Assembly (NCBI RefSeq): GCF_006345805.1
Contig: NC_043001.1
Coordinates: forward strand, 104,036,001-104,100,000
DNA: 64,000 nt
Origin: Octopus sinensis
Lineage: Eukaryota
Reading direction: 5' to 3'
Of this stretch, positions 30,195-32,451 are shown one piece after another (position 1 is the first letter of the stretch; each line of letters begins with the position of its first letter). A program made the position numbers and the translations under genes. The notes under the pieces were generated by a model. The model was not told the DNA's origin, made no database searches, and was given only the letters and a program-made list of their open reading frames with translations.

Positions 30195-32451
30195 AATTTC
30201 TATGCTTTTACCAATCTTAGGAAGTAATTGTTAGAAATATTTTGAAATTAAACTGGATAATAAGAGCATATTTCAACGAATCGGTTTTAATTAGACGCAA
30301 ACATTTACAAGAAATAAGGAAAAAGAGAAGTTCAGTCAGTACACTGGCTTTTAAAATATTTCCCCTATTATTTCACTGGTTGTTCATTGTATTCCGATCT
30401 ACACAAACTGATTATATATTCAACACATGCAAACGTGCGTGATTCCAACTCGAATCTGCACAATTGTCCGAATGAATATCAGCTAAACGTTTGATCTTTT
30501 GGCATCATAACCATTCACCTGTCTATTAACCACTCCATAATGTTTTATTTAACTAGGCACAATGGGTTTCTCTGTTTCAATGGTTGGTGGTAATGCTAGT
30601 GGCATTCAATGAGAAGTAGTGGCTTTAATCACTTAATGAAACACATTAAATTCGTAAGTTTGAAAAAGAAGAATACCTTCAACTGTCAATCAAAAACCGA
30701 TCTATGCCTTTACCTCTTCCCTCTCTCTCTCTCTGGCTTTAGTATATTACTCCCATTATGCTAATCAACTTGTGCAAATACAGTGTTAAAACATTGATAA
30801 TGTTTTATGTTAAATTGCTAATGGTTCAACAACGCTTAAGAGCGGATTTGTTTCCTAACAATAAGCGGTTTGGGTGGGTATCGAACGATGATAGTGTCAG
30901 GCTGTTGTCCGTATAGTTGTTGTTGATGTTAATGATGCAAGTGATATGCGTTTTAGTGTTTTATTTATAAAAAAAATCATTAATAAATATTTAGATATCT
31001 GTTGATAATAAAAAAAAAAGAGAAGGAACAACATCAGATTATGTTTCCATGAACATCATAATTAAGTTAACAGCATAAATGATCTCTCTTAAAACAAGCG
31101 TTAAGATGCTTTCGGATATTTTCCTGGACCCTGTCAACTGAAACTCGAATAATCGAGCTAATTGTGTACAGCAATCCTGCAACTCAATTCCATTTTTTAT
31201 GAAATTTTAATGAAATATATACCGGGATTTCTTTGTCAAATCGCTTATCTTTAGTTCTTCGATGATAACTGAAGATAAAGATGGAGAACTGAGATAGAAG
31301 GAGTTGCGAAAATAAAAATAAAACGATTCTAAAATGTTAAACGAGTCTAGTGAGTGGGATTATCTTTTTTGCTTTATTAATCTAGTGATTATCTCTTTAT
31401 ATTGCGGCAATGAAATTCAAAACAAATTATTCTGATGAGAGGACATGACTACCACAGGTAATTTAACTGCCTCATAGATTGAACTGGGTTCAACAACCCA
31501 CTTCTTTTGCTTGTTATATTACAGGCCATTAAGTAGAACAGAGAGGGAGAAAAAGAAACTGTCTGACTCGTTTACGAAACAACCATTCGCGATCAATGTC
31601 CAATAATTAGATTCTGAAAGTGTCACGTAGCAAGGGTTATCAACAGATATCTAAATATTTATTAATGATTTCTTTTATAAATAAAACACTAAAACGCATA
31701 TCACTTGCATCATTAACATCAACAACAACTATACGGACAACAGCCTGACACTATCATCGTTCGATACCCACCCAAACTGCTTATTGTTAGGAAACAAATC
31801 CGCTCTTAAGCGTTGTTGAACCATTAGCAATTTAACATAAAACATTATCAATGTTTTAACACTGTATTTGCACAAGTTGATTAGCATAATGGGAGTAATA
31901 TACTAAAGCCAGAGAGAGAGAGAGGGAAGAGGTAAAGGCATAGATCGGTTTTTGATTGACAGTTGAAGGTATTTCTTCTTTTTCAAACTTACGAATTTAA
32001 TGTGTTTCATTAAGTGATTAAAGCCACTACTTCTCATTGAATGCCACTAGCATTACCACCAACCATTGAAACAGAGAAACCCATTGTGCCTAGTTAAATA
32101 AAACATTATGGAGTGGTTAATAGACAGGTGAATGGTTATGATGCCAAAAGATCAAACGTTTAGCTGATATTCATTCGGACAATTGTGCAGATTCGAGTTG
32201 GAATCACGCACGTTTGCATGTGTTGAATATATAATCAGTTTGTGTAGATCGGAATACAATGAACAACCAGTGAAATAATAGGGGAAATATTTTAAAAGCC
32301 AGTGTACTGACTGAACTTCTCTTTTTCCTTATTTCTTGTAAATGTTTGCGTCTAATTAAAACCGATTCGTTGAAATATGCTCTTATTATCCAGTTTAATT
32401 TCAAAATATTTCTAACAATTACTTTCTAAGATTGGTAAAAGCATAGAAATT
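30195..32451. repeat. Long near-perfect inverted repeat, arms 30195-31008 and 31637-32451, 628-bp spacer
   Basis: Arm comparison shows 3 substitutions and one 1-bp indel; identical 66-aa ORFs on opposite strands in the track (30242+, 32204-). Confidence 0.97.

What the first reader, a model, noticed from the sequence alone, without database searches (positions are those of the whole stretch)
30195..32451. 2.26-kb inverted repeat with ~815-bp arms at ~99.5% identity
The arms (30195-31008, 31637-32451) are non-repetitive AT-rich DNA differing only at 30221/32425, 30867/31778, 30973/31672 and by a 1-bp indel near 30672. There is no TSD and no transposase in the 628-bp spacer. All three substitutions are transitions; in a plus-strand hairpin they give two G-U pairs and one A-C mismatch, the latter a favoured ADAR site (established). 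It is either a very recent inverted duplication, a gene-conversion-maintained palindrome, a Foldback-like element or an assembly artefact. If transcribed it would form an ~800-bp duplex (endo-siRNA or hyper-editing substrate).
Basis: partly seen in the sequence, partly recalled or inferred. Interest (0 to 1): 0.7.

Follow-up and report, generated by a model that had tools for sequence, protein, structure and literature searches.

The report
Young 815-bp inverted duplication, non-coding
A stretch of about 815 bases of unique, non-coding DNA is present twice in opposite orientation, 628 bases apart and 99.5% identical, in what looks like an octopus-type genome. It is most likely a recent local copying accident, could fold into a very long RNA hairpin if transcribed, and belongs to a class of structure already known to be common in such genomes.

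Summary
The arms are 30195-31008 and 31637-32451, with three transitions, one 1-nt A-run indel and a 628-nt spacer. It is the clear outlier in the window: the next-best local inverted pair is 429 nt at 79%.

Similarity falls to background exactly at all four arm borders. Arms and spacer have no other copy in the 64 kb. They contain no tandem subrepeats, no ORF longer than 73 aa, and no Pfam or Rfam match. There is no target-site duplication, no internal complementary region and no adapter remnant.

The window is microsatellite- and SINE-rich animal DNA. The SINE matches one I recall from Octopus, which is a lead from memory, not a test.

Best reading, at about 50%: a real, young, one-off local inverted duplication made by repair or replication, not a transposon. 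Rivals are a low-copy long-TIR element, an assembly artefact, and an older palindrome kept alike by gene conversion.

If transcribed, it folds into an 813-bp duplex. In molluscs that would more likely be an ADAR hyper-editing substrate than an siRNA source (PMC12479628, PMC5625713). This is a new member of a known kind, of low to moderate interest. Reads, the rest of the genome and RNA data are needed and were out of reach.

The parts
30195..31008 (.). Left arm (814 nt) of the inverted repeat. It is unique, non-coding and 34% GC, and contains a (CT)7 run at about 30716-30735.
   Evidence: alignment; no coding signal; no tandem repeats; no other copy in the window.
31009..31636 (.). Single-copy spacer (628 nt) that would form the loop of the hairpin. 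It starts with T followed by A10.
   Evidence: unique; ORFs of 47 aa or less, no Pfam hit; no segment complementary to the arm tips, no internal palindrome longer than 10 nt; no Rfam match of note.
31637..32451 (.). Right arm (815 nt), the reverse complement of the left arm at 99.5% identity.
30867..30867 (+). Arm difference in a CpG: the left arm reads gcGg and the right-arm equivalent reads gcAg (31778 T on the plus strand). This is the methyl-CpG deamination type of change.
   Evidence: for the positions; context read.
30221..30221 (+). Arm difference G (left) against A (reverse complement of 32425 T).
30973..30973 (+). Arm difference A (left, inside an A8 run) against G (reverse complement of 31672 C). 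It would be the A-C mismatch in a plus-strand hairpin.
30672..30672 (+). Site of the 1-nt indel: A2 in the left arm against A3 in the right arm, at 31974.

Best explanation
This is a real and evolutionarily young local inverted duplication. One 814-bp piece of ordinary, unique, non-coding DNA was copied once in reverse orientation and now sits 628 bp from its source. The event was a single repair or replication accident, not transposition. Three candidate routes give the observed A-B-A' layout with blunt junctions. (a) The 3' end at a break or stalled fork folds back, synthesis runs back along the same strand, and the end is rejoined. (b) Replication switches template to the opposite strand and back. 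(c) A micro-inversion forms with staggered breaks, and filling them in duplicates one breakpoint segment in inverted orientation. The locus has no coding capacity. Its only predictable property is physical. It can extrude a cruciform or hairpin, it can flip the spacer by recombination between the arms, and any transcript that runs through it folds into an 813-bp near-perfect duplex. In a cephalopod or mollusc host, that duplex would most likely be hyper-edited by ADAR, not diced into siRNAs. Shown here: the structure, its sharp borders, its uniqueness in the window, and the absence of transposon hallmarks and coding signal. Inferred: the mechanism of origin, the age, the host identity, and everything about RNA.
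For: The exact structure and 99.5% identity are established. Similarity drops to shuffle level immediately outside and inside both arms, which indicates one discrete event with no decayed older palindrome around it. No TSD of any length flanks the unit. The arms contain no tandem subrepeats or subterminal repeats. No transposase or other ORF is present. The spacer has no internal complementary region. No other copy or fragment of the arm or spacer occurs in 64 kb, even at relaxed stringency, whereas the window's true dispersed repeat recurs about 20 times. Three older TIR or hairpin units in the same window look different. They are short, their arms are 79-89% identical, and each sits inside a (TA)n microsatellite. 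The focal repeat therefore does not resemble the local MITE-like population. The differences between the arms look like real mutations, including a CpG to CpA change. Flanks are continuous and unique for more than 30 kb on each side, without N or adapter sequence. Octopus genomes are reported to have an exceptionally high fraction of loci able to form long, nearly perfect dsRNA (4.4e-3; PMC5625713), so a locus of this kind is expected there.
Against: The rest of the genome, reads and sister-species loci could not be reached. A low-copy transposon family or an artefact is therefore not excluded. Absence from a 64-kb window only rules out families of roughly 40,000 or more copies in a genome of about 2.5 Gb. 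The junctions show no microhomology of 2 nt or more that would positively mark template switching. Each arm taken alone is flanked by a 2-nt direct repeat: TA..TA for the left arm and GG..GG for the right. The unit also begins and ends with the palindrome AATT. I treat both as post hoc chance, but they could be faint insertion marks. The arm divergence of 0.37% is in the range of heterozygosity in such species, so a mis-join of haplotypes cannot be dismissed on divergence alone. The host assignment rests on a SINE sequence recalled from memory.
Confidence: 0.5

Rival explanations
1. The unit is a low-copy, non-autonomous mobile element with about 815-bp terminal inverted repeats (a long-TIR DNA transposon or foldback-type element). 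Alternatively, it is two copies of one roughly 815-bp element inserted head to head, 628 bp apart.
For: Both outer ends are sharp and discrete. The genome is clearly transposon-rich and holds other hairpin or TIR units. The unit's termini form the palindrome AATT, which could hide a 4-bp palindromic TSD. Each arm alone is flanked by a 2-nt direct repeat. Non-autonomous elements need no ORF.
Against: There is no conventional TSD of 2-10 bp. The arms have no subrepeats and the spacer has no internal complementary region. No transposase remnant is present. No second copy or fragment occurs in the window. A single arm has no terminal inverted repeats, LTR-type TG..CA ends, or poly(A) tail with a TSD of its own. 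The unit is unlike the window's MITE-like units, which sit in (TA)n tracts.
Confidence: 0.2
2. This is an assembly artefact. The second arm does not exist in the animal and was created by a chimeric or fold-back long read, or by a mis-resolved heterozygous region.
For: Near-identical inverted copies are a known product of fold-back or chimeric reads (general knowledge). The 0.37% divergence, one homopolymer-length difference and one change inside an A8 run could be haplotype differences or consensus errors. No read data could be examined.
Against: The palindrome is internal, with a 628-bp unique loop and two different unique flanks of more than 30 kb. An artefact would therefore need two precise switches, not one. 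There are no gaps or N and no adapter remnant at the centre or elsewhere (adapter sequences recalled from memory). A simple heterozygous inversion does not create an A-B-A' path in an assembly graph (inference).
Confidence: 0.13
3. This is an older palindrome whose arms are kept nearly identical by arm-to-arm gene conversion, as in larger sex-chromosome palindromes. It may also act as an invertible segment.
For: Arms of 800 bp at 99.5% identity and only 628 bp apart are good substrates for intrachromosomal conversion and for inversion of the spacer (established for inverted repeats in general).
Against: There is no halo of decayed inverted similarity beyond the arm borders. No gene or conserved element lies in the arms that selection could act on. 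Nothing in the sequence requires an age greater than the divergence suggests.
Confidence: 0.1
4. This is a functional hairpin-RNA gene. It would be a transcribed locus whose 813-bp duplex is processed into endo-siRNAs against a target gene (as with Drosophila hpRNAs), or serves as a dedicated ADAR substrate or sponge.
For: The predicted fold is a near-perfect 813-bp duplex. Young hpRNAs in Drosophila simulans arise in just this way, as inverted duplications (PMC10317233). Octopus shows the strongest hyper-editing signal among the animals surveyed (PMC5625713).
Against: The arms have no similarity to any coding sequence or known RNA, so no target is visible. No evidence of transcription could be obtained. 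Molluscs, including O. bimaculoides, showed no dedicated endo-siRNA pathway (PMC12479628). Being editable if transcribed is a property of any inverted repeat and is not evidence of function.
Confidence: 0.04

Closest known systems
Local inverted duplications with a single-copy spacer, produced by fold-back priming, template switching or staggered-break micro-inversion. Examples are inversion breakpoints with inverted duplications in Drosophila and Anopheles, cf. PMC1952172 in the list.
   Same: The layout is A-B-A', the ends are sharp, there is no TSD, the duplicated DNA is arbitrary and non-mobile, and the arms are near-identical when young.
   Different: The diagnostic evidence is missing here. 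That would be an ancestral single-copy state in an outgroup, spacer orientation relative to the ancestor, or junction microhomology. No microhomology of 2 nt or more is visible.
Genomic loci forming long, nearly perfect dsRNA that are hyper-edited by ADAR in octopus (Porath et al. 2017, PMC5625713).
   Same: It is a long near-perfect intramolecular duplex from nearby inverted copies in non-coding DNA. The host looks like an octopus-type cephalopod.
   Different: In that work most substrates are pairs of dispersed repeats. Here the arms are not a repeat family detectable in the window. Transcription and editing are untested.
Drosophila hpRNA loci (endo-siRNA hairpins; PMC10317233).
   Same: An inverted duplication of a few hundred bp with a loop, evolutionarily young, and near-perfect arms.
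   Different: hpRNA arms derive from a target gene or transposon and yield Dicer-2-dependent siRNAs. No target homology is found here, and the probable host clade lacks a dedicated siRNA pathway (PMC12479628).
Foldback (FB) and other long-TIR transposons such as Galileo, and the palindromic Harbinger-type repeat that is heavily edited in frog (PMC5625713).
   Same: Long terminal inverted repeats, a short non-coding middle, and the ability to fold back.
   Different: There is no TSD, no tandem subrepeats in the arms, no family members seen, and no transposase relic.

Membership tests
Foldback (FB-type) transposon | Long terminal inverted repeats built from tandem subrepeats | tested here: not met
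   TRF reports no array inside 30195-32451. A k-mer self-comparison of the arm finds only a (CT)n run and 10-12-mers.
Foldback (FB-type) transposon | Target-site duplication flanking the element | tested here: not met
   The left flank ends ...CATCCACTA and the right flank starts GGTTGAAG. There is no direct repeat of 2-12 nt. Only the palindromic terminal AATT could mimic a 4-nt TSD.
Foldback (FB-type) transposon | Dispersed family of copies | tested here: inconclusive
   There is no other copy in the 64-kb window. No arm ORF is present in the protein collection. A 30-mer is absent from metagenome contigs. The host genome itself could not be searched.
Cut-and-paste DNA transposon or MITE with long TIRs | TIRs plus a superfamily-specific TSD (TA, TTAA, TWA, 8 bp and so on) | tested here: not met
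   TIR-like arms are present but no TSD. The termini AATTTCTATGC match no motif I know, which is a judgement from memory.
Cut-and-paste DNA transposon or MITE with long TIRs | Transposase or a relic of one (autonomous copies) | tested here: not met
   The longest ORF is 73 aa in the arms and 47 aa in the spacer, with no Pfam hit at E<=1. A non-autonomous copy would not need one.
DIRS-like tyrosine-recombinase retroelement | Inverted terminal repeats plus an internal complementary region matching the ITR tips, with RT and YR genes | tested here: not met
   The spacer has no inverted match of 10 nt or more to the arm or flanks. No ORFs or domains are present.
hpRNA (endo-siRNA hairpin gene) | Inverted repeat folding into a long duplex | tested here: met
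   813 arm-arm base pairs in the MFE fold of the plus-strand RNA, at -1554 kcal/mol.
hpRNA (endo-siRNA hairpin gene) | Arms homologous to a target gene or transposon | tested here: not met
   There are no protein homologues of arm ORFs, no Pfam hit, no Rfam hit and no similarity to other repeats in the window. Non-coding targets elsewhere in the genome were not searchable.
hpRNA (endo-siRNA hairpin gene) | Primary transcript and Dicer-dependent 21-23-nt small RNAs | not testable with these tools
   No RNA data were available. The literature reports no dedicated endo-siRNA pathway in 32 molluscs, including O. bimaculoides (PMC12479628).
ADAR hyper-editing substrate | Long, nearly perfect intramolecular dsRNA | tested here: met
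   (in silico only).
ADAR hyper-editing substrate | Transcribed, with clustered A-to-G mismatches in RNA reads | not testable with these tools
   No RNA-seq access.
Repair- or replication-born inverted duplication | Single-copy ancestral state at the orthologous locus | not testable with these tools
   No eukaryotic genome collection was available.
Repair- or replication-born inverted duplication | Sharp borders, arbitrary non-mobile content, no TSD | tested here: met
Repair- or replication-born inverted duplication | Microhomology at the novel junctions | tested here: not met
   At most 0-1 nt under either polarity (read). Any microhomology absorbed into the arm ends cannot be seen.
Assembly artefact (fold-back or chimeric read) | No spanning reads, abnormal depth, or an adapter at the centre | tested here: inconclusive
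   There is no adapter-like sequence (adapters from memory) and no N. Reads and depth were not available.

The most novel reading that the evidence does not exclude
The locus is a newly born, transcribed hairpin in a cephalopod. Its 813-bp duplex would be a strong ADAR target, or an RNA-level sink for ADAR or dsRNA sensors, and its arms would also flip the 628-bp spacer between two orientations among individuals. It would then be a datable example of how the unusually dsRNA-rich cephalopod transcriptome acquires new editing substrates from non-repeat DNA.
Probability: 0.07. Interest if true: 0.5.

Novelty: new member of a known kind. Interest (0 to 1): 0.25.

Why it matters
On its own the locus matters little. 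It is one more long inverted repeat in a genome type already reported to be unusually rich in loci that can form near-perfect dsRNA.

It could still be useful as a clean, datable case. The arms differ at only 3 of 814 aligned sites and are made of unique DNA, so reads map unambiguously outside the arms. Junction PCR, spacer-orientation typing and editing assays would all be easy to interpret.

If real and transcribed, it would show that new ADAR substrates arise from one-off duplications as well as from paired transposons. If it is an artefact, it flags a class of error worth screening for in that assembly.

Tried and rejected
- **Other copies.** I ran blastn of the arm, spacer and flanks against the window at two stringencies. 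I also did an exact look-up of 10 arm or spacer ORFs among 15 billion proteins and a homology search with the 73-aa arm ORF. I scanned JGI metagenome contigs with a 30-mer and ran blastn against plasmids and phages. Nothing was found. No eukaryotic genome collection was available, so copy number in the host remains unknown.
- **Host identification.** A LINE-like ORF gave one 45%-identical Logan ORF from runs SRR11869390-94, whose organism I could not resolve. A SINE ORF gave nothing. The octopus assignment therefore rests on about 20 hits at 70-87% to a SINE sequence recalled from memory.
- **Known RNA families.** There is none at gathering score in the window. The sub-threshold plant-miRNA hits at 33157-33293 only reflect the neighbouring hairpin. 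No tRNA was found.
- **Retrocopy idea.** The left arm is followed by T+A10, and all three differences are A/G on one strand, which suggested a retrocopy of an edited RNA. I rejected this. There is no TSD around arm plus tail, the tail is interrupted, one of the three differences runs the wrong way, one is a CpG site, and three same-strand transitions have a chance probability of about 1/4.
- **DIRS-like element.** No internal complementary region.
- **Decayed extension of the palindrome.** None found.
- **Adapter remnants.** None found.
- **Coding context.** Ten of the least repetitive ORFs of the window gave no Pfam hit.

Full report
**Observation**

The inverted repeat is exactly as described. 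The repeat finder reports two abutting arm pairs, 30195-30673/31973-32451 and 30663-31008/31637-31982. A gapped alignment joins them into one 814/815-nt arm pair. It has three substitutions, at 30221/32425, 30867/31778 and 30973/31672, and one 1-nt indel at 30672/31974.

Identity is 99.5% and the spacer is 628 nt. All three substitutions are transitions.

The repeat is not a chance feature and is the outlier of the window. Among all inverted pairs lying within 6 kb of each other, the next best is 429 nt at 79%. The rest are pairs of dispersed repeats at 69-86%.

**Context**

The window has no N and no soft-masking. It is about 37% GC and packed with microsatellites. It holds no tRNA and no Rfam family at gathering score. 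None of the ten least repetitive long ORFs hits Pfam.

About 20 copies of a tRNA-derived SINE are present. They match, at 70-87%, a sequence I recall from Octopus genomes. That is a lead from memory, not a test. My attempts to confirm the host through the protein collections failed. I therefore treat the host as 'probably an octopus-type cephalopod'.

**Anatomy of the unit**

- The arms and spacer carry no tandem repeats. They have no internal direct or inverted repeats beyond 10-12-mers and a (CT)7 run.
- No ORF exceeds 73 aa in the arms or 47 aa in the spacer.
- There are no Pfam hits even at E<=1 and no protein homologues.
- There is no meaningful sub-threshold Rfam hit. The miRNA-like hits lie in the neighbouring hairpin at 33157-33293.
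- Neither arm nor spacer has another copy or fragment in the 64 kb, even with word size 7 and E<=1. This only excludes very abundant families, roughly 40,000 or more copies in a 2.5-Gb genome (inference).
- Similarity between the outer flanks, and between the two ends of the spacer, is at shuffle level immediately beyond the arms. All four borders are therefore sharp.
- The unit has no target-site duplication...CCACTA | AATTTCTATGC ... GCATAGAAATT | GGTTGA....

Two small oddities remain. The unit starts and ends with the palindrome AATT. Each arm alone is bracketed by a 2-nt direct repeat, TA..TA and GG..GG. Both were found post hoc, and I regard them as chance.

There is no junction microhomology of 2 nt or more under either polarity of duplication. 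No sequencing-adapter remnant is present (adapters from memory).

**What it is**

The transposon readings fail their testable defining features.

- Foldback-type elements need subrepeated arms and TSDs. Neither is present.
- Cut-and-paste elements need a TSD. None is present.
- DIRS-like elements need an internal complementary region and genes. Neither is present.
- A pair of independent insertions would need each arm to look like an element. Neither arm has TIRs, LTR ends, or a tail with a TSD.

The window does contain three older hairpin or TIR units, at 6118-6526, 6636-7405 and 32922-33544. These are short, with arms 79-89% identical, and each is embedded in a (TA)n microsatellite. The focal repeat shares none of these traits.

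An old palindrome maintained by conversion is not favoured, because no decayed similarity surrounds the arms.

An artefact cannot be excluded without reads. It would need two precise strand switches inside otherwise unique, gap-free sequence. One of the arm differences is a CpG/CpA change typical of real mutation.

The best-supported reading is therefore a real, one-off, recent inverted duplication of arbitrary non-coding DNA. It could have arisen by fold-back priming, template switching or a staggered-break micro-inversion. I give this about 0.5.

With 3 differences in 814 sites (0.37%), and an assumed neutral rate of 1-5e-9 per site per year, the event would be roughly 0.4-2 My old (inference; the rate was not measured here).

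**How it would behave**

The plus-strand RNA of 30195-32451 folds into 813 arm-arm pairs, with an MFE of -1554 kcal/mol.

Whether the locus is transcribed is unknown. If it is, the fate of the duplex depends on the host.

- A survey of 32 molluscs, including O. bimaculoides, found miRNAs and piRNAs but no dedicated endo-siRNA pathway. It suggested RNA editing as the way dsRNA is 'melted' (PMC12479628).
- Octopus shows the strongest hyper-editing signal among 19-22 animals. It also has an exceptionally high fraction of loci able to form long, nearly perfect dsRNA, at 4.4e-3 (PMC5625713).

ADAR hyper-editing is thus the more likely outcome, and Drosophila-type hpRNA function (PMC10317233) the less likely. 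No target homology is visible either. At the DNA level, the arms can recombine to invert the spacer and may be fragile during replication (general knowledge).

**Novelty and verdict**

The Foldback-like and long-maintained palindrome options are disfavoured. The artefact option is possible but not likely. The endo-siRNA option is unlikely in the probable host.

The structure belongs to a known kind, a local inverted duplication that can form dsRNA, in a genome type where such loci are already known to be common. Interest is low to moderate. The decisive data are reads, the genome-wide copy number, orthologous loci and RNA-seq, all of which lay outside the available tools.

Noticed in passing
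window 32922-33544: A second, older foldback lies right next to the focal repeat. Its arms are about 300 nt and 79-89% complementary, with a 35-nt loop. The RNA fold is -360 kcal/mol with z = -30. It is bounded by (AT)n(GT)n on the left (32810-32920) and (TA)n on the right (33547-33570). It looks like a MITE-type element in a TA microsatellite and is unrelated in sequence to the focal arms.
   Followed up: partly
window 6041-7497: Two further TIR or hairpin units are nested in one long (TA)n tract. The first, 6118-6526, has roughly 80-nt terminal inverted repeats. The second, 6636-7405, has 244-430-nt arms at 79% around a (CA)n/(TG)n core. Each is bounded by (AT)n arrays at 6041-6117, 6527-6634 and 7408-7497. 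This suggests elements that target, or seed, TA microsatellites.
   Followed up: partly
window, about 20 sites (e.g. 1814-1970, 14301-14663, 19474-19644, 24227-24637, 42834-42997): There are many copies of a tRNA-derived SINE. They are 70-87% identical to a sequence I recall from Octopus genomes. Its open frame (..SFSFRLPNPLTRLWSARGY..) accounts for many of the spurious long ORFs in the window.
   Followed up: partly
window 4705-5072, 8925-9282, 937-1104: A 184-bp unit is present as a 2-copy tandem at 87%. It has inverted relatives about 4 kb away at 82-86%. It is probably another dispersed repeat family.
   Followed up: no
window 16557-16919 (-) and 1987-3063 (-): These are degenerate retrotransposon- or transposase-like ORFs. 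They resemble a LINE RT C-terminal region and a possible mariner-like fragment, judged by eye. There is no Pfam hit. The only database hit is a 104-aa Logan ORF at 45% identity.
   Followed up: partly
window 28352-28656; 37846-38296 and 39219-39487: Very long microsatellites are present: (AAT)~103, and (TATC)~114 facing (ATAC)~65 about 1 kb away. The latter pair produces most of the low-identity 'inverted repeats' listed.
   Followed up: no
window 30019-30175: A purine-rich (GA/GGGA)n tract ends about 20 nt before the left arm. Similar short tracts sit in the arm (30716-30735, on the CT strand) and in the spacer (31540-31560). They could form non-B DNA structures near the duplication breakpoint. 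This is speculative.
   Followed up: no
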